Under the pieces are notes generated by a model. That model ran no database searches. It had not been told where the DNA came from and was given only the letters and a program-made list of their open reading frames with translations. DNA of 40,520 nt, from NCBI RefSeq assembly GCF_001194135.2, contig NC_068991.1:34536392-34576911 (forward strand). The letters run 5' to 3'. Shown piece after piece: positions 3,348-31,340 of the stretch (position 1 is its first letter; each line of letters starts with the position of its first letter). Source of the DNA: Octopus bimaculoides (Eukaryota). A program made the translations under genes and the position numbers.

Positions 3348-3558
3348 CAGCGTACATAAGCACGTCATCACATATTGAATACCATTTCGAAACTGTGTTA
3401 CGCGCTTGGCTACATGAGTTTTTGTATTTGTTTCTGACTTCACTATTTTTTTCATTTTTATTATGAACACATCCTTCTCTGCTTTCATTTTTATTTCCTC
3501 TAAAGTGACAGGTAGTTCTCGTACTACGTTGCAGAGTGTATTTTTTATTATTGCTATT
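3348..3558 (-). pseudogene. Gypsy pol fragment (RNase H-integrase linker)
   Basis: Translation KNTLCNVVRELPVTLEEIKMKAEKDVFIIKMKKIVKSETNTKTHVA closely matches KNILCNIVHKLPVTLEQIKMKAEKDVFIIEMKKIVKSETNTKSHVA at ~10340-10500. Confidence 0.85.
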
Positions 3559-4329: not shown

Positions 4330-5700
4330 CATATTAATATTATTCATAATAATCACCAGGGCGAAGGATGAGGGGGACAATACAAAGACAGATATAAAGT
4401 GTTGGGATTTACATATAATGGAATGATACAAAAAGAAAAGGAAAAGGAAAAGTATCCATGGTATACATTAAAAGAAGGGTATACATAGTATACGGCACTA
4501 AGAAGAATGAAAAAGTGTTAGTGATGGGGTCCTCCTGATACAGGAGGACCTCCAGGGATAATTGAGGAACCCCACCATCCAAGATCACCCAGAATACCAA
4601 AGACAAGAGCCCTTTCCAACTCTTTTCCTCCAGCTCACAGGTCTACACTCTTACCATTTTCGCAACTTTCACCCACCTTTATATAAATTCACTCATGGAC
4701 AGCACCTCCCTCTCCACCCTCATTTTCCTTTGCAAGTGAAATTTGAAAAAGTTGATGAGGGCTTCACCAAAGAGGAATGTGTCTGTCCTCATTCCTTTCA
4801 GCCTCATCCACAGACAACCTCTTTTGCCACAGCCACCAAGCAAAGGAAAACTGCCTTGCCTGCCTGATTAAAGGAGGTTGTTAGGGCAATCATCACTATG
4901 GACTTGGATGACAGATGGATCCATCCCACACGCAACAGCAGCTGTTCAACATAACTTCACAAGTCAGCAATGCCCAAACTCATTCAGAGTGCATGCAGAA
5001 CGGTTTCTGACAGTACATCTGTGCCAGTAGAGTTTATCTCGAGCCAGTAGTGCCCTGTGGTAGCACTGCCAAGCCAAAGACATCTGGAAATCATCCTTAA
5101 TAGTCCCTGACTGAAAAGTCCTCCGGAACAGACTAGCTAGTTTTTCTGTATTGACCCCAGAGCACCCCTAAGATGTCGTCGCACTTCTCCACCACTAATC
5201 TATATATAGCTGAAGTGGAACATTCACCAATCCTATTGTCTGATGTCTGACTGGTAGAGGACAGTGAGCGTCTAACGATATTCTAGGTGCCAGGTGCCCA
5301 GTCTTGGTCCATCCTTCCCCCAGGACTGCAGCTCTGTCAACGAGATGAGTTGCGGAAAGACGTGCCTCACAACAGAGTCCACATTTGTACACCTTCTAGA
5401 AATCCCGCGTCTGTGCATCAAAACCCACAGCGTGCTGAAGCTGCCACTCGGAGAGAATTGGCAGTAGACTGACCGCCCGACTATTGGAATGTGTCCCTTC
5501 TACAAGAAAATGAACAAGAGATGCTCCAACTTGATCAAGCAATAACTGAGGCAAGGCACGACAAGGCATGACAGAGGCGATGTAGGCATTCGTCACCTCT
5601 ACCCAACCTGGGTAAGACTGGTCACCTTGTTCATCACCTCGTCCCAGTTCTTGTTCACTTGGAGATTGGGACCAAATCAGACCCCAAGCAGTCTAACTGG
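4330..5700 (-). mobile_element. Tx1-type LINE, 3' part (post-RT ORF2 and 3' UTR), decayed
   Basis: Minus translation RPVRLLGV*FGPNLQVNKNWDEVMNKV ... LINFFKFHLQRKMRVEREVLSMSEFI*RWVKV, typical of L1/Tx1 ORF2 C-termini, followed by a pyrimidine-rich 3' UTR ending near 4330-4345. In frame with 13585+ once the Gypsy insert and one TSD copy are removed. Confidence 0.8.
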
Positions 5701-5756
5701 TGTTGTGGTGAAATCCTGACACCCCTGTGGGCTAGCAAGTGAACTGCCCTAAACCT

Positions 5757-5762
5757 TATAAA
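5757..5762 (+). promoter_or_regulatory. Putative LTR TATA box (also 11736-11741)
   Basis: CCTTATAAAGG is conserved at the same offset (+57) in both LTRs. Confidence 0.55.
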
Positions 5763-5800
5763 GGCGCATGTGTACTGACAGGGCGACGTACAGTGTGGTG

Positions 5801-7446
5801 TTTTTCTGTTCGGTTAAATCATTTTTGATCCCTGTTAGACGTAAGTCACATTGTTAAATATTTGTTGAAGGTCTCCTGTAAGGGTGAACCTAGGATTTAA
5901 TTTGTTGAATTGTTGAAGTACTGTTGCTGTTTTTTGCCTACGGGTGTGTGATTTTGTATTTGTTTTCTTCCCCATTTATGAATGAAGTGGAGGAAAAAGG
6001 AAGAATGGAGTACGAACCAGTTCTAGCACATGCCTGCAGTTATGCATCAGCAACAGGAAGAGGTTTAATTACAGATGCATTGGAGGCTCGAGAAGTGAAG
6101 ATTGAGCCAAAGAAACTAAAAGAATACAACAGGTTAATTCAGAAGGAAGGAATCAGTTTAAGGCTGACCCCGCCGGAAGATTTAACAACCAGCATAACAA
6201 AGCGAACAGTGGTCTACAGCACACTGTCTATGTCAACATAAAAAAAATAGAAATAGCCACAGTGGAAGCCATAGAAGAGTGTTTGAAGGAAATAAAAGGC
6301 CTCACAACATTCTACACGAGAGGAAGAAAATATGGCACAGTGGAGGTGAGGTTCTCTAACGAACAGGAAGTGATAAATCACTCCACTATGGTACTAAGGA
6401 CGCAAGAGTGGTGGTGGAAGGAAGACCACCAACTTGTTATCAATGTGGAGAGAAGGGACATATGAGAGCAAAGTATCCCCAGGGAGACAATAAAGGTGAA
6501 GAGGAACAACAGCAGCAGAGTGCTGAAGTGGCGGTGCTAGAAGTTGAGAAAGACACGGAGGAAGCGGAGGATGCATTCACTGTGGGGAACAGAAAAAAGA
6601 GCAAAGAATGTGTGAACTCACCGCCAAAGAGTCTGAAAAAGAAAAGGAGGAAGAAATCTATATGATAGGGAGTTGGCAGCAAAGAAGTGCACCAGCATCA
6701 CCAACAAAAGGTAAAAAGGAGGAAGAAATAGGCATTATAGAGAGCCGACGACAAAAAAGTACAACAGCATCATCAACAAAAGAACAAAAAAAGGAGGAAG
6801 AAATGGACATTAGAGAGAGCTGGCAGCAAGGATGTGCAATAGAATTACCAACAAAAGGACAAAAAAGAGAAACTTGCCCAGACAACCCAGGTGTGCAGCA
6901 GAAACGAGCAGTCGAGAAGCCGAAGAAGAACAAGTGGTATTTGGCAACATATGCAAAAAGTACGGCCATAGAGAAAAGAATTACAAAATTCAAATCGGTA
7001 ATAAGGGTAAAATTACCAGTAGAGCTGTATACAGAAAGCGTAAAAGGAATTGTGATAGACCGAGAGAGGTACGGAAAACTGAAGGGTTTATTCGGAAATG
7101 ACATAGACCCATTGAGAGTAGAGGTGGAGTTTGATGAACTACCACCTGTTGTGGAGTACAAAGATTTAGAACCATTCATAAATTTCTAAAAAGTAAGATG
7201 TTAAAATTTAATAGACTATAAATACGATGCTAAAAGGTAAAAAGAGAAAGAAAATGATTAAAAACTGTTAAAACATTTAAATGGTACTACTTGAAAGTGG
7301 GGTTCAATGCAGCTATTTCATCACCATTAATTTTATTCATCCTTCATTCGTTCATTTTATGTTTTTTTTTGTCCCCACTGTGGCGTTCTGTTTGTCCTTG
7401 TGCTGTCCCCTCTGTGTCATGGCCTGTGTTCCAAATAAAAGAGATA
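5801..7446 (+). mobile_element. ORF1-only Tx1-related element A (HAL1-like 'half-LINE') in the 5' LTR
   Basis: Flanked by GTACAGTGTGGTG (5788-5800) and GTACAGCATGGTG (7447-7459). Has a T-rich 5' UTR, a single ORF1-like frame, the 3' UTR motif GTCCTTGTGCTGTCCCCTC and AATAAA at 7434-7439. Confidence 0.7.
5978..7189 (+). pseudogene. Tx1-type ORF1 (RRM-like + CCHC knuckle + C-terminal domain), frameshifted, with an internal deletion of ~240 bp
   Basis: SYASATGRG...LRLTPPED...IEECLKEIKGLTTFYTRGRKYGTVEVRF...VVEGRPPTCYQCGEKGHMRAKYP...FDELPPVVEYKDLEPFINF*. Homologous to 11908-13221 and to the host LINE ORF1 at 15480-16740. Confidence 0.75.
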
Positions 7447-7590
7447 GTACAGCATGGTGCGTGCAGTCACACTTGTGAAGGTAGTCGTACAAGTCGTTGA
7501 GAAGAGGTATAAGTTTGTTACTGATTTAGTTTTTGTAGTGTTATAACACTGTTACAGTGTAGTCTATATCCAAACTAAAGGATATAAGAG

Positions 7591-7600
7591 TGGCGACGAG
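7591..7600 (+). other. Primer-binding site TGGCGACGAG (tRNA-Ser(GCU)-type)
   Basis: One base after the LTR end. Complementary to ...CUCGUCGCCA, the 3' end of metazoan tRNA-Ser(GCU) as I recall it. Confidence 0.8.
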
Positions 7601-7631
7601 ACATTCGAAGCTCACTGTGGACGTTCTTAGC

Positions 7632-10600
7632 ATGGAAGACCTATTAGTTTCCATGGTACAGTTGCAACAGAAACTACTACTACAACAAGAACAACAGAAA
7701 CAGCAACAACAAGTACAACAGCAACTACAACAACAACAACAGCAAAATCAACAGTTGTTGGAATTATTGTTGCAGTTCAGGTTCGTTTTCGGCAGATGGG
7801 GTTGCTAATTCAATTGAAGAATTTACTTATAATCCAGAAGAAAGGATAACGTTTTCTGCATACTTCAGAAGGTATGAAGGAATCTTCAAAGAAGAATGTA
7901 GAAACTGGACAGATGAAAAGAAGGTACGACTTCTTTTAAGATTATCTCCATCAGAACATTAAAAGTATTGTAATTACATCCTGCCAAGAAAACTATCCCA
8001 AATTTGTTTTAAGGAAATAATTAACCTGTTATCTAAAATATTCAGTGAAAGAAGTTCACTATTTAATATTCGCTGGGAGTGCTTAAATTTGAAAAGAAAA
8101 GAAACTAAAGATTTCGTCACGTATGCCGCAATTGTAAACAGAGAATGTGAAAAATTTAAACTAAACCAATTAACCCCGGACATGTTCAAATATCAAATCT
8201 TTGTACAAGGACTAACAGCAAGCAAAGATGCAGAGATACGGGATCGGATAGTGACAAAATTAGAACAAGATTCGAAACTAACTCAACAGGCAGTGGCTGA
8301 AGAATGTCAAAGGATTATAAATTTACGACAGGACGACACGTATGTGTCGACCTGTAACAGATAAGAAAAAGGAAAAACAACGGTCAAGACCCAAACCATG
8401 CTATGGGTGTGGAGAAATACATTTTAAAAGAAACTGTCCTTTTAAAAATCTAAAATGTTTCGGATGTGGAAAAATCGAACATAAGAAGTCACATTGATGG
8501 ATGAAACAAAAAAAGGTCGAATGCAAAAAATTCGAGAAAAAATGTATTGTCAACACAAATGCAAGACTGTAGTTAGACACAAGTAGTGATAATATGATAA
8601 TTAACGATGATTCATTGAGAAAAAAAAAAGTCTACATTGAAAATAAACTTCGAAAATTGCGCGAACAATTACGATTTAGGGGCGAAACGATAAGGTGACA
8701 TTTCGTGGAAAAACTTTGAAAGCTAAATTTTTGTATTAAAAAATACAACAAACCTATTTGGCACANNNNNNNNNNACCTCCCCATAAATACTTTTTGGTA
8801 ATAATGTAAATGGTTCTTACGCCAGTTCAAATAAAGCGTCGAAGGATTTAAAAAAGAAATTAAAGAAGATTTTTCCTGATATTTTTTTCTAAAGAATTAG
8901 ATAGGTGCACCAAGACAAAAGTAAAATTTCACGTGAAAGAAAACGCTGTACCGGTATTTAAACCGAAGCGAGCTGTACCTTTCGCGGTCAACGAGGAATT
9001 TGATAGATGTGAAAAGCTTGGAGTTATAGAAAAAATTGATTATTCAGAATCAGCATCACCAACTGTTTATGTGAAGAAAAAAAAAATACGAGCGTGCGCT
9101 GACTTTTCAATAGGCTTGAACGAATGTTTGATGACATACAGTTACTCATTACTAAGTCTGGAGGAAATTTTTGCAAAACTCAACGGAGGAAAATCTTTTT
9201 CAAAGTTGGATTTGTTGGAGGCCTATTTACAGTTACAAGTCAAGGAGGAATGTTTGAAATTATTAACGATAAACACCCATAAAGGTTTATATAAATTCAG
9301 TCGACTTCCTTTTGGGATAAAGGTAGCACCTAGTATTTTCCAACAGGTGATGGACACTATACTTGCAGATACAGATTTCGCTATAGCTTACTTGGATGAC
9401 ATACTCATAAAAAGTGAGTTTCGAGACCAGCATGACAAACATGTTAAAAAGGTCTTTGAAAGATTAAAGGCATATAAAAAAGAATAAAGGCAATAAAATA
9501 TATGCCTCCCCCGAAAAATATTACATTACAAACTATTACCAAACATATATACCAAATATGCATGAGCTAAGAGCACCCCTAAACAACCTATTGAAAAAAG
9601 ACGTTAAATGGTATTCGTTGGACAGGTGCCAAAAAGCGTTCAAAGAAATTTTAAAAGTTTTAACATCAGAACTGTCATTATCACACTAAGGCGGCGAGCT
9701 GGCAGAATCGTTAGCACACCGGGCGAAATGCTTAGCGGTATTTCGTCTGCCGTTACGTTCTGAGTTCAGATTCCGCCGAGGTCGACTTTGCCTTTCATCC
9801 TTTCGGGGTGGATAAAGTAAGTACCAGTTACGCATTGTAATCGACTTAATCCGTTCGTCTGTCCTTGTTTGTTCCCTCTATGTTTAGCCCCTTGTGGGAA
9901 ATAAGAACTGTCATTATCACACTTTGATCCAAATTTTAAAATAGTAGTAGCATCAGATGCTAGCGAAAGTAGTATAAGGGTAGCCTAAAACCCATTGCTC
10001 ATTGTTGGCGGCTGAAAAAAACTACAGCCAAATTGAGGAGGTGGCATTAGCCATTATTTTTGCGGTGAGAAAATTTCGCAAATTCATATATGGAAAGGAA
10101 TTCAGTCTGCAGACTTATCACCGCCCATTGTTGTCAATTTACAGATCAAAAAAGGGTATCACCACACATACAGCCAGTCGATTGCAGTGCTGGGGGATGA
10201 TCCTGCTAAATTAGGACTTTAAAATGGAATTTCCACCATCGAAAAAACTGGGATATGTGGATGGGCAATCAAGATTGATACCTAAATACTATGAACCATT
10301 AGAGGACACAGTAATAGCAGCACTAAAAGCTGAAATCGAAATAAAAAATATACTCTGCAATATAGTACACAAACTACCTGTCACTTTAGAGCAAATAAAA
10401 ATGAAAGCAGAGAAGGATGTGTTCATAATAGAAATGAAAAAAATAGTGAAGTCAGAAACAAATACAAAATCTCATGTAGCCGAGCGTAACACAGTTTCAA
10501 AATGGTATTTGAAATGTGATGACATACTTATGTACGCTCATAGGGTTGTAATACCTGTTTCTTTGCAAAATTGTATGCTAAAAGAATTCCATATGGGACA

Positions 10601-11561
10601 TCCAGGAATTGCGAGAATGAAAGCACTGATGAGGAGCTACGTCAACTGGCCGAATATGGATCAGGATATTGAAAAATTGGTGAAAGCCTGCAAGGTTGTG
10701 CCCTGGCAGCAAAAGCACCACCAATAAAAATTCAGCCTTGACCCGAGACTGACATATCTTGGTCCAGATTATACATAGACTTCGAAGGACTGTTAAATGG
10801 AGGGTATTATCTAACAGTTGTGGCTAGTTACACGAAATGACCGGAAATATGTAAATGTAGGAAGCCAACCTCTAAAGCAACAATGGAATTTCTGGACGAA
10901 ATTTTTTGTGCAATATGACGTCCCACACATTATAATGTCTGATAACAGAACACAGTTCACGTCGAAATAATTTTTAAACTTTTGCAAAATGCATGCAATG
11001 GAGCATACCATTCAAGATCAAATGGGCTAGCAGAACGTTTAAGAGGGCGCTGAAAAAATCTTGGAATGAGCTACTAGCTAATACTGCATTAACGCAATTC
11101 TTAAGTGTCTACCGAATAACGCCTAACCCCAACACCACTTCTGGTGTCGCCAGCTGAATTAATATTTGCCGGGAAAGTCAGGTCAGTGTTTGACAAATTA
11201 CTACCGGAAAGAAAAGAAAAGGTGGAGAGAAACACCGAAAATAAGATAAAATAGTTCAAAATCGGTGATGAGGTGTTTTTTTAAAATATACAAAAATGGA
11301 AAGGGAAGTTGGGAAGAAGGTATAATAAGTAAACGTTTAGGGAAAATAATGTACACAGTAAAAGGTTATACGTGTGAACACAAAAGACATTTAAACCAAC
11401 TAAACAAAAGGCTTACAGAAGAAAGAATAAGACACGAAGAACCAATGAAATTACTTTATGACATTTTTGACGTCCCGGTACCGCAAGGAATACTCAAACC
11501 AATGAGTGCATCGACTAGGAAAAGAAAACAAATAAAACTTTTGCAAGTAGAGCCAAAATGA
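7632..11561 (+). pseudogene. Gypsy gag-pol (gag, two CCHC knuckles, protease, RT, RNase H, integrase), many stops, frameshifts and deletions
   Basis: Gag FTYNPEERITFSAYFRRYE; knuckle CYGCGEIHFKRNC; protease remnant LDTSSD; RT FSKLDLLEAYLQL...RLPFGIKVAPSIFQQVMD...AYLDDILI; RNase H AEKNYSQIEEVALAIIFAV; integrase HMGHPGIARMKALMRSYVNWPNMDQDIE. Confidence 0.92.
9688..9903 (+). mobile_element. Young tRNA-derived SINE inserted in the Gypsy RT-RNase H region, 20-bp TSD
   Basis: AGAACTGTCATTATCACACT at 9668-9687 and 9904-9923. Head AAGGCGGCGAGCTGGCAGAATCGTTAGC, B-box-like GAGTTCAGATTCC, CpG-rich. Confidence 0.9.
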
Positions 11562-11665
11562 AAAAAAATTTCCAATTTCTTCCCAGGGAATTAAGTAAAA
11601 AAAAAAAAAAGTGTGAGAGAGGTGGTAATAAATATATGATAAAGAAAAGAAAAATCTTGATTTCC

Positions 11666-11679
11666 AAGGAAAGGGGAGA
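11666..11679 (+). other. Polypurine tract AAGGAAAGGGGAGA
   Basis: Directly abuts the 3' LTR start TGTTGTGG at 11680. Confidence 0.85.
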
Positions 11680-11769
11680 TGTTGTGGTGAAATCCTGACA
11701 CCCCTGTGGGACAGCAAGTAAACTGTCTTAAACCTTATAAAGGTGCATGCGTACTGACAGTGTGCTGTG

Positions 11770-13430
11770 TTTTTGAGTTGAGTTGTGATTTTGATTGAAG
11801 AATGCATTGCGGTGAGTCGGAGTTTTTGTTGTTGAAAGAATATTGTTGAAGATATCGTTATTGTTGAACTTTGTTGAATAATTTTTGCTGTAATACTCAT
11901 TGTGGGTATGAATACACCAAGTTACACTGCGGCAGCAGGCAAAAGCCTGTCTGCCAATGCTATGGAAATGACAGAGATTAAAACGGACATGAAGAAAATT
12001 CTAAGCCATAAAAAATTAATTGCGAAAGAAGGTGACTGCCTTAGGGTAACTCCTCCTAAAGAGGACACGCAACGTGCAGAGAAAAAATTGATAGTGTACA
12101 AAACACTGAATGTGGAAAGGAGAAAAAATTGAAATAGCAGCGACAGAAGAAATAGAGGAGTGTCTTAGCCAAATAAAGGATATGACAACATTCTATTTTA
12201 GAGGAAGAAAATTTGGCACAGTGGAGGTGCGTTTCAGAAATGAGGAAGAGGCGAAAAGGTACGCCATGGTAGCCTTAAGAACTGAAAAATGGGCACTCTT
12301 GCCAACTTACTGCGGCAAACGTGCCACAAGAATAAGAAATGGCAGAATGCCTCCAGAAATGAATGAGGAATGGCTGGTGGCAGCCATCATTTATAATTGT
12401 AAAGAAGTGGAAGTGGTGAAGGTGGAAAAGTCGAAAGAGATTAACTGGTAGGGATTTGGATTAGAAGTTCTAATCCATGTATCACTACCGGATCTGCATA
12501 ACATCGCGGAAGAGTTGGTGCTCCCCAATGACACCCGACTGAGGGTCGTGGTGGAGGGGAGGCCACCTGTATGCTACAAATGTAGAAGTAGGGGACACAT
12601 GCAGGCGGTGTGTCCCCGAAGAGAGGTACAGGTAGAAGAGACAGAGGTCAGCGTAGAAGAAATGGTGGAATGCGAAAGAAAGGTGGAAGAATAACAACAG
12701 GTGGAAGATGTGGAGGAAACTGCAATGGAGAGAAAGAGAGCACGGACCAAATCACCACCAAAGAATTCAAGTAAAAAGAAAGGGGAAAAGAAGACAGTGG
12801 AGGAAGAGGAAAATATAGAGATTTGAACCCAAGAACCCGAGGATACAGATAAATATGCAAGAGAATCGGAAAGAGCGGTGAAAATTGAAGAGTGGGAGAG
12901 GAAAGTAGAAGAAAGGATGTACGAAGCAATGATATTCGAGACTCTGATAAGAAAACATTACCGTACGTTAATGTACTATGAAAAAGATATAGAGATTGAA
13001 AAAAAGATATCGCAGATAAAGGGGCTGTAAGAGTAAGGATGGATCCGGTGATAATCGAAGGATATGATAAAGCTGCACTGGTAGAAGAGAGTGTGGTGAA
13101 GAGACTGGAAGAGATATACCCGAAAAAAATTGTAGCAAGTGGGCTATATGTGCGATACAATAATCTGCCGAAAGTTATAACGCCAGAGGAGTTATTGCCA
13201 TATATAACGATTGCAGAATAAAAATATCTCAAAACTGTATAAGAACTGTATGAAAAGAACAGTCAAATGAAGCTGCGATTTTTTTCGGGGGTGGGGTGTG
13301 TGCTTGTAAGCCATTTCATCAATTCATTGTAATTCATCATTCGTTCTATGTACCCCACGTTTTGTATCGTAGTGTCTGTCCTTGTAGTGTCCCCCTCTGT
13401 GTTCAGGCCGTAGTGCCTAATAAAGAGATA
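11770..13430 (+). mobile_element. ORF1-only Tx1-related element B (HAL1-like) in the 3' LTR
   Basis: Flanked by ACAGTGTGCTGTG (11757-11769) and ACAGTGTGGTGTG (13433-13445). 3' UTR motif TCTGTCCTTGTAGTGTCCCCCTC at 13375-13397, AATAAA at 13419-13424. Ends AATAAAGAGATA like element A. Confidence 0.7.
11908..13221 (+). pseudogene. Tx1-type ORF1 (RRM-like + intact CCHC knuckle + C-terminal domain), disrupted
   Basis: MNTPSYTAAAGK...FYFRGRKFGTVEVRF...LLPTYCGKRATRIR...VVEGRPPVCYKCRSRGHMQAVCP (knuckle 12572-12613)...YNNLPKVITPEELLPYITIAE*. Confidence 0.78.
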
Positions 13431-13584
13431 GTACAGTGTGGTGTGTACAATCGCATTTGTGAAGGCAATCATAGAAGTCATTGAGAAGAGATATAAGTTT
13501 GTTACATGTTTGTTACTGATTAAGTTTCTGTAGTGTTATAACACTGTTACAGTGTAGTCTATATCCAAGCTTAAGGATATAAGA

Positions 13585-15440
13585 ACTGGTCTGTCAGTCC
13601 AGCGTTCGTTTACACCATCTGATGGCATCTCCAGATGCCCAGTCGCAAGTCCGACTTCTCGACGCTGATTTTGGCCCCTTCTGTCAACTCAAATTCCATC
13701 TTCATTTTGGAGGCGTCCAACACCATGATGGTGACATCGTCTGCATATTGCCAACACTGCATGAGAATGTGCCAGTTCAAAAGAGATGCCCCTCAATTGT
13801 TCCAACTTCCGTAACAGTGGTTCAAGAACCAGCACATACAGAAGAGGTGACAAAGGGCATCCCTGACTGACTGAGTATGTGATGCTAAACGATTCCGATA
13901 GATGGCGGTTTACTTTAACCCCTGAGCAGGTGCTGCTGTGCATTGCAGTGATCCAGCCTCTGAAAACAGGTCTGGAACCAGCCGCTTTAAGGACGGCTTC
14001 CAAGTAGCAATAGTCAACTCTATCAAATGCTATCGATTGATCCAAATTGATCAGGGCCCCACCGAAGCCAGCTTTAGTCCCAGCCCTCTCTATGATGAAT
14101 CAATGTATCATATAAGGTGGAGGTTGTCGTGGATAGACCTGTTCAAGATTGCACATTTTTGTGCTTTCCCTACTAGGCTACCAATGACAAGCCCCAACCT
14201 TTTCACTAAAACCTTGGCCAAAATTTTAAACTCTATGTTTAGCAGAAAATCCACATGTAGCACATGCCTATCTCGATTCATCAAAGACCGGATTGTGGTT
14301 TTGTTGCCATGTTGCGTCTCCACAATTCAGGCCAATCAGACAGCTTCAGTTCCCTCATGTTTTAGTGCATGGTCCTTAGCTCTGGCAACGCATCCTTCGT
14401 GTTTTGCCTCCAAGAAATGGTCAAGAGTCTTTCTCGCTGCTAACACATTAGTGGTGATGCCTTTACTAATCGCCTCTTCTGGTTTGCTATCCAAAGTCAA
14501 TTTAGATAGGACTCATAGACAGCGACCTGGTTACTAAACTATTTCCTTCTATTGCTAACTCTTTGCTAAATGCTATCGATTCTGCTCTAATCACCCTCTT
14601 CAGGGCTATCTACTACTGGTTGTTAACGATACCCCCCCCCCATCAACTGCCACTTAACTAGTTTGCCAATCTGGTCCCTGTAGTCTTTATGTTCTGGAAA
14701 GGACACGTTCAGCTTCCAGTAACCAGGTTGCTGTCTATGAGTCCTATCTAAATTGACTGCAGATCACAAATTTATGGTCTGTGAAGCTGATCAATTTGAA
14801 TTGTGGACACCCTATGCTATCCCTATCTGCTGACCTAACAAATACTCTATTTAGATACAATCTGGATGACCCATTGTGGTTGTTCCATGTCCACACTAGC
14901 ATATCAGGTAAATCCGGTTGATACCTGTCAGACAGCTGGAAGTTTCTAAGCAGGTTTTCGAGGCTTTTACACCCGTTTCTTCTATGTACAAGACTCGCAC
15001 AGTCCTTCTGCACCTCCAAAATACTATTCCAGTTCTCAACTAATACTAAAGTGCGAGATGTTCCCAGGAATGTTTCTAGACGCCTGAAGAAATCTGGCCT
15101 TCCAGCCCCCTTTGGGGCATACATGGCCACCAATCTAAAGGCACCATCTTCACTGCCATTCACATCTATGACTACCAACCTACCATCCAGGTCCAAGAAG
15201 ACTACCCTTATTTTGAGACCTAAGGATTTTTAGAATAACATTGCTACACTGCCGCCCCCTCCCCACGGACCACAAGGTGAGAATACCTCATAATCTTTGA
15301 AAATGGATGCTAGAGCATGTTTCCCAGAAATTTTTGTCTCACTAATTGCTGTCACATCTAAATTAAGGGATCTGAGATCGTTGAGCAAGTGACCCTGCTT
15401 CCAAACCGAATCCAGGCACATTTACACAGTCAACTCTAAG
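13585..15440 (-). pseudogene. Tx1-type LINE ORF2: APE endonuclease and RT (5' part), decayed
   Basis: EN: LNLDVTAISETK, FRLVAMYAPKG, LVLVENWN, WTWNNHNGSSRLYLNRVFV. RT: DFLLNIEFKILAKVLVKRL, LDQSIAFDRVD, SVSQGCPLSPLLYVLVLEPLL, YADDVT. Confidence 0.9.
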
Positions 15441-15479
15441 TATAGAGACAAAAAGATGGAGTTACATACCTTGGTCTTC

Positions 15480-16740
<1,261 letters not shown>

Positions 16741-17140: not shown

Positions 17141-17404
17141 TATATTTAAATGTAAATGTTATAATTACTAAATCTTTCTAAAGGATACAGCAGCAGTTCT
17201 GGGTATTAATATTTATTGCCAAACTAATGTGGCAGCCCAGAGAAATAGGACGAATGCTGCTGTTGATTAGCTCCGAGAGGCGATCACCCCTAGCTAGCTA
17301 TATAACGCATGATGTATGGATATATATATGTATGTATGTATATATGTATGTATATATTTATGTATATATATGTGTGTATATATATATATATATTTATGTT
17401 ACAT

Positions 17405-21490: not shown

Positions 21491-22479
21491 CTATGCCATT
21501 TTAATCCCAAACAATGCCAGGTATCTCTGCTAATAGTAATAATAATAATAAGAAGAAGAAGAAGAAAAATGAAAGGAACACAGAATGAATAAAATATACA
21601 AGCTTTTTTGTTACTTCAAAATCATACAAATTTAGGTTGGTTAATAACATTGTTCAATGATAGGTATGTTATTGAAGTGTGCTGTATTTATTTTGTGTTT
21701 ATATAGAAAACACGCTCCTTAATCTAATTCCAATGGCTTAAACAGAAGATAAGTTACGGTATGATATAAATAACAAAAATGTACATCTAGTGAATAGTTA
21801 CATATTGTGGTTTTGCTGATGAAAAACTCTAGTGTTTGCACTAAATGTTTGAATGTGTAGCAACCCTGTTAACTGAGTTCATCCTTACAGATAACTCTGC
21901 ATCTTACTGACAAACTTTATGGCAAATTAGGACACAAGGTCAGTTGTAGAATTCATCTTAAAACACTAGTTATTTATCACTTGAAAGTATTAGTCAGCAC
22001 AGGAACTAAATTATCTTCAATCTATTTTTAAAAGTAGGTTGTATGTAAGTTTATGGATGGTGTGTGTGTGTTTGTTTACTAGTATATGGATCTGCAAGGA
22101 ACTGTTGCTTTAATGTTATCTTTAATGTGTTATAAGCCCAAAGAAACAGGGTTTCAGTTTTAAAAAAGTAAATTTAATGAAGCTAAGGTTGAATTTTTGT
22201 AATGACTATCACTGGATTAAATATCATTGTTGAACATTTGTGCAGTGCATGGACTAGACTGAATTCTGGGACTTTTGGCCTGTAAGACCACAGTTCAAAG
22301 AAATACTCTGTAGATTTTATCATTTGTGCAGCACATAATCAAAATGACTTCTGAGGTTAACAGTATGGAATTGATTAATTAATGTATGTGTGGGTGTTTT
22401 AGATACATATATTTATGAATTACGTCACAGTAAATTGGTGGAATTGTTATAGTATTAGATAAATTGCTTACTGGTATTT

Positions 22480-22620
22480 GCTCAGGCTTTATAGCTTCTG
22501 GGTTTAAATCATGCTGAGGTCAACTTTGTCTTTCATCCTTCCAGGATTGATAAAATAAAGTACCAGTCAAATAATGGTGTTGATGCTGTTGACTGAACAC
22601 CAAGCCCATAATTGTTGGCC
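22480..22620 (+). mobile_element. Old partial SINE (family of 9688-9903)
   Basis: GCTGAGGTCAACTTTGTCTTTCATCCTTCCAGGATTGATAAAATAAAGTACCAGTC resembles 9775-9828. Confidence 0.6.
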
Positions 22621-31169: not shown

Positions 31170-31340
31170 ATAGGTGGTGAGCTAGCAGGATCGTTAAAGC
31201 ACCAGATAAAATGCTCAGTGGTATTTCTTCCAGCTCTGAATTCCAGTTCTGCTGAGGTCAACTCTGCATTTATCTTTTGGGGTTGATAAAATATGTATCA
31301 GTTGAACATTGAGAATTGATGTTATCAACTTATCCCCTCC
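31170..31340 (+). mobile_element. Old SINE copy (family of 9688-9903), CpG-depleted
   Basis: AGGTGGTGAGCTAGCAGGATCGTTAAAGCACCAGATAAAATGCTCAGTGGTATTTC aligns to the head of the 9688 copy. Confidence 0.7.

What the first reader, a model, noticed from the sequence alone, without database searches (positions are those of the whole stretch)
5701..13584. Candidate LTR-targeting 'half-LINE': two different ORF1-only Tx1 derivatives at the same site in both LTRs of one Gypsy element
Seen: each 1.9-kb 'LTR' resolves into a ~230-bp LTR plus a ~1.65-kb insert (A 5801-7446, B 11770-13430). Both inserts have the same 3' junction, AATAAA(A)GAGATA|GTACAG. Both are flanked by 13-bp direct repeats (A GTACAGTGTGGTG/GTACAGCATGGTG; B ACAGTGTGCTGTG/ACAGTGTGGTGTG), and their 5' junctions differ by about 2 nt. 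LTR ends agree at 74/81 and 69/73 nt, while the inserts align only as protein (very roughly 30-45% identity by eye, with conservative changes). The ACTGG TSD and the in-frame rejoining of the host LINE ORF2 show a single Gypsy insertion. Established: reverse transcription makes the two LTRs identical; Tx1-clade LINEs are often target-sequence specific (including into other transposons); HAL1-type elements encode only ORF1; a precise 3' junction with a variable 5' junction is the TPRT signature. Inference: two independent insertions of diverged members of a non-autonomous family that targets GTACAGTGTGGTGTG in this LTR, i.e. a retroelement parasitising an LTR retrotransposon. I know of no description of this arrangement but cannot search.
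Basis: partly seen in the sequence, partly recalled or inferred. Interest (0 to 1): 0.9.

Follow-up and report, generated by a model that had tools for sequence, protein, structure and literature searches.

The report
ORF1-only LINE copies in both LTRs
One old, dead Gypsy retrotransposon in an octopus genome carries, at the same nucleotide of each of its two terminal repeats, a different copy of a small LINE-derived element that encodes only the first LINE protein; this points to site-preferring insertion, which is a known habit of this LINE group and not a new kind of system.

Summary
Window 5701-13584 is one decayed Ty3/Gypsy copy with an ACTGG target duplication, inserted in frame-restorable fashion into a Tx1-like LINE ORF2. 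The N gap hides only about 8-9 pol codons.

Each 1.9-kb LTR is a ~230-bp LTR plus a 1.65-kb insert:
- The 3' junctions are identical.
- Each insert has 11-15-bp flanking repeats.
- LTR flanks differ by K2P 0.09-0.13; the inserts by 0.6-1.0.

The inserts are ORF1-only derivatives of an octopus L1/Tx1-type LINE:
- They consist of 5'UTR, ORF1 and a LINE 3' tail.
- Their ORF1 matches the ORF1 of a full-length Octopus sinensis LINE.
- Further ORF1-only copies with target duplications occur in O. vulgaris, O. sinensis and O. bimaculoides.
- ORF1 shows purifying selection (dN/dS 0.2-0.5).

Two independent insertions at one LTR site is the best reading. "A family that targets this LTR" is not shown. 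Equally related copies sit at non-LTR sites, and no genome-wide census was possible.

Tx1 families preferring LTR retrotransposons (crocodilians) and ORF1-only LINEs (HAL1, HeT-A) are already described. I rate this a new variant of known kinds, of moderate interest.

The parts
4345..5700 (-). Host L1/Tx1-like LINE, 3' part: ORF2 C-terminal region, 3'UTR and tail. The tail ends ..TGTCCCCCTCATCCTTCGCCCTGGTG next to ATT-rich DNA.
   Evidence: tblastn to L001 ORF2 residues 531-929; sequence; 66-70% nt identity to the L001 LINE
5696..5700 (+). Gypsy target-site duplication ACTGG, left copy
   Evidence: host ORF2 is restored when one copy is removed
5701..5800 (+). 5' LTR, upstream segment. Starts TGTTGTGG; TATAAAG at 5757-5763; ends with the insert's target duplication GTACAGTGTGGTG at 5788-5800.
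   Evidence: 91% identical to 11680-11760
5801..7446 (+). Insert A, an ORF1-only LINE derivative. 5'UTR 5801-5974 (starts TTTTTCTG); decayed ORF1 5975-7189; 3'UTR and LINE tail 7190-7446 with AATAAA at 7434-7439. ORF1 has frame changes near 6241, 6405 and 6660, lacks about 73 codons of the RRM-to-knuckle region, and carries a 3 x 72-75-nt tandem repeat at 6642-6869.
   Evidence: ORF1 homology to the L001 LINE ORF1
7447..7589 (+). 5' LTR, downstream segment. Starts with the second copy of the insert's target duplication, GTACAGCATGGTG, at 7447-7459.
   Evidence: 88% identical to 13431-13584
7590..11679 (+). Gypsy internal region, heavily decayed. PBS-like TGGCGACGAGACA at 7591; gag with two CCHC knuckles; protease; N gap 8766-8775; RT; RNase H; integrase; polypurine tract ending at 11679. 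RT has an open stretch at 8933-9487, followed by loss of about 55 codons.
   Evidence: three-frame translation; tblastn to P0005 in the order gag-PR-RT-RH-IN; 54-55% identity to Gypsy polyproteins with PF00078, PF17917 and PF00665
9688..9903 (+). SINE inserted in the RT-RNase H linker. Its 20-nt target duplication AGAACTGTCATTATCACACT lies at 9668-9687 and 9904-9923. Its 3' tail is of the same type as the insert and LINE tails.
   Evidence: (D10)
11680..11769 (+). 3' LTR, upstream segment. TATAAAG at 11736-11742; ends with the target duplication ACAGTGTGCTGTG at 11757-11769.
11770..13430 (+). Insert B, an ORF1-only LINE derivative. 5'UTR 11770-11904 (starts TTTTTGAG); decayed ORF1 11905-13221; 3'UTR and tail 13222-13430 with AATAAA at 13419-13424. 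ORF1 has frame changes near 12125 and 13020 and several in-frame stops, for example at 12449.
   Evidence: (nearest proteins are all Octopus)
13431..13584 (+). 3' LTR, downstream segment. Starts with GTACAGTGTGGTGTG at 13431-13445.
13585..13589 (+). Gypsy target-site duplication ACTGG, right copy
13590..16464 (-). Host L1/Tx1-like LINE, 5' part: RT, APE endonuclease, and ORF1 remnant with a CCHC knuckle.
   Evidence: tblastn to L001 ORF2 residues 1-603 and ORF1 residues 230-338; translation

Best explanation
A single Ty3/Gypsy element with ~230-bp LTRs integrated into a Tx1-like LINE, making the ACTGG duplication.

Later, two different members of an ORF1-only ('half-LINE') lineage of octopus L1/Tx1-type LINEs integrated by target-primed reverse transcription. 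One went into each LTR, at the same nucleotide and in the same orientation:
- The bottom-strand nick fell before GTACAG in both cases.
- The top-strand nick fell 13-15 nt downstream.

These elements are 5'UTR, ORF1 (RRM-like domain, CCHC knuckle, C-terminal domain), and a ~200-500-nt 3'UTR ending in a conserved LINE tail. They have no endonuclease or reverse transcriptase. They must therefore be copied in trans by an autonomous LINE that recognises the shared tail.

Hitting the same site twice implies that the mobilising machinery strongly prefers this LTR sequence. The site lies about 31 nt downstream of the LTR's TATAAAG, roughly where LTR transcription should start.

Shown here: the anatomy, the homology, the age difference between flanks and inserts, the existence of the ORF1-only lineage, and its selection.

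Inferred: trans-mobilisation, sequence preference of the partner endonuclease, and any use of the LTR promoter.
For: - LTR flanks differ by K2P 0.094 and 0.133, while the inserts differ by 0.6-1.05. LTRs are identical at integration (established retroelement biology), so the inserts arrived afterwards and separately.
- The 3' junctions are identical and each insert has its own 11-15-nt flanking repeats.
- Both inserts start at the same element position, TTTTT(C/G)...
- The insert ORF is homologous over its whole length to ORF1 of a full-length LINE in O. sinensis (L001). That LINE's ORF2 has Exo_endo_phos, RVT_1 and zf-RVT. Its best solved relative is human L1 ORF2p at 5e-23, against R2 at 1e-5.
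- The tail motif GTC(C/T)TTGT..TCCC(C)TCTGTGT..GCC..GTG..AATAAA is shared by A, B, the SINE at 9688-9903, the host LINE and the L001 LINE.
- Further ORF1-only copies with target duplications occur in O. vulgaris (L006), O. sinensis (L009) and O. bimaculoides (L007 and L008).
- ORF1 dN/dS between L007 and the L008 copies is 0.20 over 129 codons and 0.47 over 207 codons.
- The ORF1 family has 804 representatives at E <= 1e-3; every one of the 20 whose source I looked up came from an octopod or an unnamed run.
- The sister LINE in L001 is flanked by (ATT)n on both sides, so target-specific behaviour exists in this group.
- Tx1-clade LINEs are often target-specific, including for other transposons and for LTR retrotransposons (PMC4494074).
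- A related Gypsy, L003, has short LTRs with no ORF.
Against: - Only two events support the site preference, and both are in one element.
- No empty or additionally filled LTR of this Gypsy family could be retrieved.
- L006 and L009 sit at non-LTR sites with unrelated target duplications. L009 is as related to A and B as they are to each other. Target choice therefore does not follow ORF1 relatedness.
- The L008-X tail is 93% identical to B's tail, yet that copy is not at the LTR site.
- No autonomous LINE with this target was found.
- An assembly gap lies inside the element.
- The 2-nt difference at the 5' junctions could be a slippage deletion.
Confidence: 0.6

Rival explanations
1. Hot spot without a dedicated LTR-specific family. 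The ORF1-only elements are mobilised by LINEs of loose specificity. This LTR position is hit repeatedly because of a local property: a short GT-rich motif ACAGTGTGGTG, a promoter or start-site DNA structure, or pairing with the RNA 3' end. On this view the target is a motif or structure, not 'the LTR'.
For: - Relatives L006 and L009 are at non-LTR sites with different target duplications.
- The nick contexts share only a C before the nick: GCGAC|GTACAG, ACGCC|TGCTGG, CCAAC|AGCTAG.
- The site is GT-rich and lies about 31 nt downstream of TATAAAG.
- The related L003 LTR also has GTACAGT and CAGTGTG motifs.
Against: - Two hits at the very same nucleotide are hard to obtain from a loose preference in a ~2.7-Gb genome.
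- The L006 and L009 insertion sites share a significant 31-nt motif. That hints at sequence-specific targeting in those subfamilies as well, not at loose specificity.
Confidence: 0.17
2. One insertion by reverse transcription plus ectopic gene conversion. Only one LTR, or neither, was hit in this copy. The other insert was copied in from a filled LTR of another Gypsy copy, using the ~90-nt and ~145-nt LTR flanks as homology.
For: - The flanks on both sides of the inserts are 88-91% identical between the LTRs, enough for homology-directed repair.
- The flanking repeats would be carried along with the converted tract.
Against: - It still needs a second, different insert at the same LTR site somewhere in the genome, so it does not remove the need for repeated same-site insertion.
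- There is no mosaic pattern in the LTR flanks.
Confidence: 0.1
3. Assembly artefact. The scaffold joins two copies of the Gypsy family at the N gap, or short-read contigs threaded through the wrong repeat copy. On this view A and B are not in one element.
For: - A 10-N gap lies inside pol at 8766-8775, and five other gaps lie in the window.
- The O. bimaculoides loci I fetched are also gap-rich.
Against: - Each contig runs uninterrupted from unique host flank through the LTR segment into its insert.
- The two host flanks are adjacent codons of one LINE ORF2 and share the ACTGG duplication.
- The two sides of the gap are adjacent pol positions.
- Even a chimera would still show A and B at the same LTR site in the genome.
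Confidence: 0.07
4. LTR-borne gene. The ORF is an intrinsic part of long LTRs in this Gypsy family, and the two LTRs differ because of recombination between subfamilies.
For: Both LTRs carry an ORF of the same architecture, at the same place and in sense orientation.
Against: - The inserts have their own flanking direct repeats, a LINE-type tail shared with a SINE and with autonomous LINEs, and free-standing relatives with target duplications outside LTRs.
- A related Gypsy has short LTRs with no ORF.
- Non-coding LTR flanks could not stay 88-91% identical while the ORF diverged to 35% protein identity.
Confidence: 0.04

Closest known systems
[quoted passage not shown]
   Same: - An APE-type LINE group whose members insert at defined sequences, including inside other transposons and in microsatellites.
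- Here the autonomous relative L001 sits in (ATT)n, and the two inserts sit at one LTR site.
   Different: - The window elements lack ORF2, so any specificity must be supplied in trans.
- Clade membership was not tested by RT phylogeny.
- Preference for the LTR rests on two events.
- The host is a cephalopod.
HAL1 (half-L1) of mammals, a non-autonomous L1 derivative encoding only ORF1p that arose several times (PMC5753468, citing Smit 1999 and Bao & Jurka 2010)
   Same: - The architecture is 5'UTR, ORF1 and 3'UTR with no ORF2.
- It propagates as a lineage.
- The ORF1 coding capacity is kept: dN/dS is 0.2-0.5 here.
   Different: - ORF1 is of the RRM + CCHC-knuckle type, not the coiled-coil/RRM/CTD type of mammalian L1.
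- The 3' end is a specific tail with AATAAA and no poly(A) run.
- Origin is independent, in octopods.
- HAL1 is not site-specific.
HeT-A of Drosophila telomeres (PMC5537684)
   Same: - A Gag/ORF1-only non-LTR element lacking pol that depends on another element's reverse transcriptase.
- Its location is targeted and it forms head-to-tail arrays. L008 shows two ORF1-only copies joined head to tail.
- Its transcription is driven from sequence upstream of the element.
   Different: - HeT-A belongs to the Jockey clade, targets chromosome ends and is domesticated for telomere maintenance.
- Nothing of that sort is indicated here.
SINE-LINE partnership through shared 3' tails (Kajikawa & Okada 2002, as cited in PMC4494074)
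   Same: The inserts, a SINE inside the same Gypsy, and autonomous LINEs all share a 3' tail motif. This is the usual mark of trans-mobilisation by a stringent-type LINE reverse transcriptase.
   Different: The passenger here is protein-coding and 1.65-1.9 kb long.

Membership tests
Ty3/Gypsy LTR retrotransposon (the carrier element) | Two LTRs in direct orientation, a short target duplication, and a PBS next to the 5' LTR and a polypurine tract next to the 3' LTR | tested here: met
   LTR ends are 88-93% identical; the duplication is ACTGG; TGGCGACGAGACA starts at 7591; AAGGAAAGGGGAGA ends at 11679
Ty3/Gypsy LTR retrotransposon (the carrier element) | Pol domain order protease - RT - RNase H - integrase | tested here: met
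   tblastn to P0005 is collinear along 7774-11567. The homologues carry PF13975, PF00078, PF17917/PF17919, PF17921 and PF00665.
L1/Tx1 superfamily LINE (autonomous relatives: host LINE and L001) | ORF2 with an N-terminal APE endonuclease, RT and a C-terminal zinc-binding motif; a separate ORF1 | tested here: met
   Pfam Exo_endo_phos, RVT_1 and zf-RVT on L001 ORF2; ORF1 at 9965-11812 upstream; best solved relative is human L1 ORF2p
Tx1 clade specifically | Placement inside the Tx1 clade in an RT phylogeny with reference elements | not testable with these tools
   No reference LINE RT set was on hand. Indirect support only: published octopus repeat annotations list L1-Tx1 as the L1-type group (PMC13282606), and L001 sits in (ATT)n.
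Type-I LINE ORF1p (RRM + CCHC knuckle) | A CCHC zinc knuckle | tested here: inconclusive
   CX2CX4HX4C is present in B (CYKCRSRGHMQAVC) and in relatives; in A the last cysteine is replaced (CYQCGEKGHMRAKY). Pfam zf-CCHC scores 16.8-18.1 bits, below the 20.8 cut-off.
Type-I LINE ORF1p (RRM + CCHC knuckle) | An RRM fold | tested here: inconclusive
   The AF2 model of P0001 is poor overall (pLDDT 47.6). Residues ~57-132 reach pLDDT 70-85 with a b-a-b-b-a-b topology. Foldseek top hits are RRM domains, but none has E <= 1e-3.
ORF1-only non-autonomous LINE (HAL1-like, by architecture) | ORF1 homologous to that of an autonomous LINE; ORF2 absent; the LINE 3' end retained | tested here: met
   tblastn of B against L001 ORF1 gives 2e-42. 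Only 209-257 nt lie between the ORF1 stop and the element end in A and B. Tails align with the LINE tails.
ORF1-only non-autonomous LINE (HAL1-like, by architecture) | Propagated as such: several copies with their own target duplications, and coding capacity under selection | tested here: met
   L006 has a 19-nt duplication, L009 has an 18-nt duplication, and L007 and L008 are further copies. dN/dS is 0.20 and 0.47.
HAL1 sensu stricto | Derived from mammalian L1 | tested here: not met
   The elements come from octopods and have a different ORF1 type. They work like HAL1 but are not members of it.
Target-specific (site-specific) LINE | Independent copies at the same target position with a precise 3' junction | tested here: met
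   A and B are at one LTR position with identical 3' junctions. This is n = 2 only.
Target-specific (site-specific) LINE | Most genomic copies of the family at that target; empty and filled target copies both present | not testable with these tools
   No octopus genome search was available. DNA scans of the public collections gave 0 hits.
Target-specific (site-specific) LINE | Relatives are not found at unrelated sites | tested here: not met
   L006 and L009 are at non-LTR sites with different duplications. This holds for the wider lineage; the A-type and B-type subfamilies themselves could not be sampled.

The most novel reading that the evidence does not exclude
Octopods harbour an old, selectively maintained lineage of ORF1-only Tx1-type elements. 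Its subfamilies each home to a defined sequence inside another transposon. The A and B types home to the transcription start region of a Gypsy LTR, about 31 nt downstream of its TATA box. There they would be transcribed from the LTR promoter and terminated at their own AATAAA. That would make them a protein-coding hyperparasite of an LTR retrotransposon that also depends on a third element for reverse transcription.
Probability: 0.25. Interest if true: 0.65.

Novelty: new variant of a known kind. Interest (0 to 1): 0.45.

Why it matters
If the site preference is real, this is a three-layer parasitic chain. A non-autonomous, protein-coding LINE derivative borrows the enzymes of an autonomous Tx1-like LINE and lands in the promoter region of a Gypsy LTR.

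It would extend two known phenomena to cephalopods: target-specific Tx1 elements and ORF1-only 'half-LINEs'. It would also give a natural case for asking what ORF1 protein contributes in cis when ORF2 comes from elsewhere.

There is a practical consequence for annotation. Such composite LTRs inflate apparent LTR length and would mislead LTR-based dating and family classification in octopus genomes.

Tried and rejected
- **Other copies in the window.** I looked for the LTR or the inserts elsewhere in the window and found none.
- **Rfam.** No hits over the window.
- **Pfam on the insert ORFs.** Only a sub-threshold zf-CCHC.
- **Same-family Gypsy copies through Pol homologues.** The best hits are only 54-55% identical and come from marine metagenomes. 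They served only for the gap test and for LTR length.
- **Exact-pattern scans.** The LTR 31-mer and an insert 30-mer gave 0 hits in metagenome contigs (twice) and genome contigs.
- **O. bimaculoides proteins P0001, P0002, P0128 and P0134.** These could not be traced to contigs.
- **Whether the L007 element lies in an LTR.** A TGTTGTG 116 nt upstream and a TATA-like box looked promising. Alignment to the window LTR is no better than shuffles (p 0.3-0.5), and the 3' side is lost in a 2.1-kb gap. I dropped this as evidence.
- **A common target motif shared by the LTR site and the L006/L009 sites.** By eye, TGAA..TAGTC seemed shared. It is not significant in local-alignment tests (p 0.2-0.8).
- **Structure prediction of ORF1.** This gave a low-confidence model, and I use it only as weak support for an RRM.
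- **LTRs different at integration through template switching between co-packaged RNAs.** I rejected this on the established mechanism: both LTRs are copied from one minus-strand U3-R-U5.

Full report
**Organism and setting**

The only protein relatives of the insert ORFs are from octopods: Octopus bimaculoides, O. sinensis, O. vulgaris and Argonauta hians. The window is therefore octopus DNA. The closest matches (51-58% identity) are O. bimaculoides proteins.

The finding lies inside an L1/Tx1-like LINE on the minus strand, roughly 16464 down to 4345.

**Observation check**

*The Gypsy element*
- The element is 5701-13584 and is bounded by ACTGG on both sides.
- It has a PBS-like TGGCGACGAGACA starting at 7591 and a polypurine tract ending at 11679.
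- Its internal region is collinear with Gypsy polyproteins in the order gag-PR-RT-RNase H-IN.
- It is dead, gene by gene:
  - gag has at least two frame changes (near 7790 and 8340) and in-frame stops (7960, 8495).
  - Protease has a stop near 8570, further frame changes, and the N gap.
  - RT keeps a 184-codon open stretch (8933-9487) and then lacks about 55 codons.
  - A SINE sits in the RT-RNase H linker (9688-9903, with a 20-nt target duplication).
  - RNase H and integrase carry several stops and frame changes.

*Host continuity*
- Deleting the element and one ACTGG restores the host ORF2 as ..ERWTDRPVRLLGV.FGPNLQVNKNW...
- This matches ..DRWTDGPVKLLGVWFGPDLQVDKNW.. of a full-length O. 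sinensis LINE.
- It is therefore one insertion event.

*The assembly gap, tested first as asked*
- Three related Pol proteins read NLFG + 11 residues + LPINSF at this point. The window reads NLFGT-[10 N]-LPINTFW.
- One tblastn match spans the gap, 41 residues against 33 codons.
- About 8-9 codons are hidden, and the two sides are neighbouring positions of the same gene.
- The gap length is only estimated, so in-frame reading through the N run has no weight.
- Continuity of the locus rests instead on the matching host flanks.

*The LTRs*
- The first 81 nt agree at 74/81 (K2P 0.094). The last 143 nt agree at 126/143 (K2P 0.133).
- In between, identity collapses: K2P is 0.6-1.05 and most of the alignment is arbitrary.
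- Two patches are exceptions: a 113-nt coding patch at 76%, and the last 60 nt of the inserts at 78%.
- The 3' junctions are identical: ..AATAAA(A)GAGATA|GTACAG.
- Each insert is bracketed by its own direct repeat: A at 11/13, B at 12/13.
- Subtracting the inserts and one repeat copy gives an LTR of about 230 bp.
- A related Gypsy from a marine metagenome (L003) has LTRs of about 210-310 nt that start TGTTGT. They are followed by TGGCGACC and contain GTACAGT/CAGTGTG motifs but no ORF.
- The short LTR is thus the ancestral state and the 1.65-kb pieces are additions.

**What the inserts are**

Both have the same plan:
- a 5'UTR beginning with a T run;
- one ORF of about 410-440 codons;
- 209-257 nt of 3'UTR ending in a conserved tail with AATAAA.

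The ORFs are decayed.
- A has three frame changes, a ~73-codon deletion and a 3 x 72-75-nt internal tandem repeat.
- B has two frame changes and several stops.
- They are clearly homologous to each other: BLASTP E 1e-43, and 35% identity over 346 aligned residues.

They are also homologous along their whole length, including the C-terminal domain, to ORF1 of a complete LINE in O. sinensis (L001; tblastn 2e-42).
- That LINE's ORF2 has the APE endonuclease, RT and zf-RVT domains.
- Its best solved relative is human L1 ORF2p (5e-23, against 1e-5 for R2).
- The host LINE of the window is 66-70% identical to it in ORF2.

The last ~60 nt of A and B share a motif with four other elements: the tail of the SINE inside the Gypsy, the tail of the host LINE, the tail of the L001 LINE, and the tails of other ORF1-only copies. 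Shared tails are the classical sign of trans-mobilisation by a LINE reverse transcriptase (PMC4494074).

The 'Tx1' label is reasonable but was not tested by phylogeny.
- Published octopus repeat annotations list L1-Tx1 as the L1-type group (PMC13282606, PMC8967140).
- The L001 LINE is flanked by (ATT)n on both sides. That is the kind of target specificity typical of Tx1.

**A real lineage, not two accidents**

A profile search over 1.84 billion representative proteins finds 804 ORF1 relatives at E <= 1e-3 and 334 at E <= 1e-10. I could fetch four more loci.

| Locus | Species | Element | Target duplication | Context |
|---|---|---|---|---|
| L006 | O. vulgaris | complete, ~1.7 kb, starts TTTTGAG, no ORF2 | 19 nt | in a small repeat between (AT)n tracts |
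| L009 | O. sinensis | complete, ~1.85 kb | ~18 nt | in an intron |
| L007 | O. bimaculoides | A-like copy | not determined | 3' end lost in a gap |
| L008 | O. bimaculoides | two A-like copies joined head to tail; the first is ORF1-only | not determined | tail 93% identical to B's |

Between the L007 and L008 copies, ORF1 shows dN/dS of 0.20 (129 codons) and 0.47 (207 codons). The protein was therefore under purifying selection while these ORF1-only elements diversified.

This is the same logic as HAL1 in mammals (PMC5753468) and resembles HeT-A in Drosophila (PMC5537684).

**Two independent insertions?**

Reverse transcription copies both LTRs from one minus-strand U3-R-U5, so they are identical at integration (established mechanism).
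- The flanks have since diverged by about 10-13%.
- The inserts differ at least five-fold more, and their ORFs belong to different subgroups. A is nearest L007 at 46%. B is nearest P0135, P0001 and P0002 at 51-58%.
- They cannot descend from one sequence in the newly integrated element.

Recombination between two elements at different loci is excluded by the matching ACTGG and the collinear host ORF2.

The remaining options are these:
- two insertions into this copy;
- one insertion plus gene conversion from another filled LTR;
- an assembly chimera.

All three require that two different elements entered this LTR position at some time. Same-nucleotide coincidence by chance is negligible, so some form of site preference is implied.

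**How far the 'LTR-targeting family' claim goes**

Here the evidence is thin, and partly negative.
- L006 and L009 are not in LTRs, and their target duplications are unrelated to GTACAGTGTGGTG.
- L009 is as close to A and B (38-39%) as they are to each other (35%). Target choice does not follow ORF1 relatedness. That fits specificity supplied in trans by different autonomous partners, but it also fits a local hot spot.
- The downstream flanks of L006 and L009 share a significant 31-nt motif (0 of 3000 shuffles reach the score). Those copies may therefore have a defined target of their own.
- L007's flank is not demonstrably an LTR.
- I found no empty LTR, no further filled LTR and no autonomous LINE with this target. 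No tool here can search an octopus genome.

**Likely mechanism (inferred steps marked)**

1. An autonomous L1/Tx1-like LINE supplies ORF2 protein. (inferred)
2. Its reverse transcriptase recognises the conserved 3' tail of the ORF1-only RNA. (inferred from the shared tails)
3. Its endonuclease nicks the LTR bottom strand before GTACAG, and cDNA synthesis starts at the exact RNA 3' end. (the precise junction is shown)
4. The top strand is cut 13-15 nt downstream, which gives the flanking repeats. (shown)

The site lies 31 nt downstream of the first T of TATAAAG (5757 and 11736), roughly the expected LTR start site. An inserted copy could therefore be transcribed from the LTR promoter and polyadenylated at its own AATAAA. 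This is speculation and was not tested.

**Comparison with what is known**

- Tx1-clade LINEs are often target-specific. Examples are Tx1L in the Tx1D DNA transposon, Keno in U2 genes, and Kibi and Koshi in microsatellites.
- ORF1-only LINE derivatives are known as HAL1. A Gag-only, targeted, trans-dependent element is known as HeT-A.
- The combination seen here may be undescribed: an ORF1-only lineage of Tx1-like LINEs in octopods, with two members at one Gypsy LTR site. I could not check Repbase or Dfam. It is nonetheless a variant of known kinds.

**Verdict**

- Interest is moderate.

Noticed in passing
window 9688-9903 (target duplications 9668-9687 and 9904-9923): A SINE is inserted in the Gypsy RT-RNase H linker, with a 20-nt target duplication AGAACTGTCATTATCACACT. 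Its 3' tail has the same motif as the insert and LINE tails, so it is probably mobilised by the same LINE group. More diverged copies lie at window 22462-22567 and 31172-31311 and in L001, L006 and L009.
   Followed up: partly
L001 9720-9778 and 15345-15375; window ~4335-4360 (minus strand): The full-length O. sinensis LINE is flanked by (ATT)n on both sides. The host LINE's 3' end in the window abuts ATT-rich sequence (ATTATTATGAATAATATTAATATG). This suggests a microsatellite-specific LINE family.
   Followed up: partly
L008 8462-10402: Two A-like ORF1-only elements are joined head to tail with no target sequence between them. The tail ..CCTAATAAAGAAAA runs directly into a 5'UTR that lacks its first ~14 nt. 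This could be a tandem insertion or a template jump. A 5'-truncated, different Gypsy lies next to them on the other strand (5869-8026).
   Followed up: partly
L006 11674-11704 and L009 ~11122-11152: The DNA just downstream of two ORF1-only elements in different species shares a 31-nt motif, TGAT(A/G)A..TAC(A/C)CTGAAACTAGTCT (0 of 3000 shuffles reach the score). The upstream flanks are not alike. This may be a second target sequence or a shared repeat.
   Followed up: partly
L006 9626-9923; window 17159-17278: The sequence hosting the L006 element is itself a repeat with an internal ~150-nt inverted duplication. It lies between (AT)n tracts, and a fragment of it also lies next to an (AT)n tract in the window.
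   Followed up: no
window 6642-6869: There is a three-copy 72-75-nt tandem repeat inside the insert A ORF. It encodes a repeated K/E-rich segment that is absent from insert B and from the relatives.
   Followed up: no
window 3349-3548 (minus strand): A short integrase fragment of a Gypsy of the same or a closely related family lies here (52-64% to P0005; by eye close to window 10350-10560). No LTR is nearby.
   Followed up: no
window 14483-14535 / 14718-14770; L001 ~13300-13590: A 53-nt inverted repeat (89% complementary) lies inside the host LINE ORF2. The L001 LINE also carries an inverted ORF2 segment. These look like internal inversion-duplications in these LINE copies.
   Followed up: no
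L002 (Logan contig SRR11869385_2367685): This is a LINE copy in which the N-terminal part of ORF1 is fused to the C-terminal part of ORF2. Internal deletions other than the clean ORF1-only form also occur in this group.
   Followed up: no
window 5757-5763 and 11736-11742: TATAAAG lies 31 nt upstream of the insert nick site in the 5' LTR. In the 3' LTR the spacing is shorter because of a 12-nt indel. The insertion site therefore coincides with the expected LTR transcription start.
   Followed up: no
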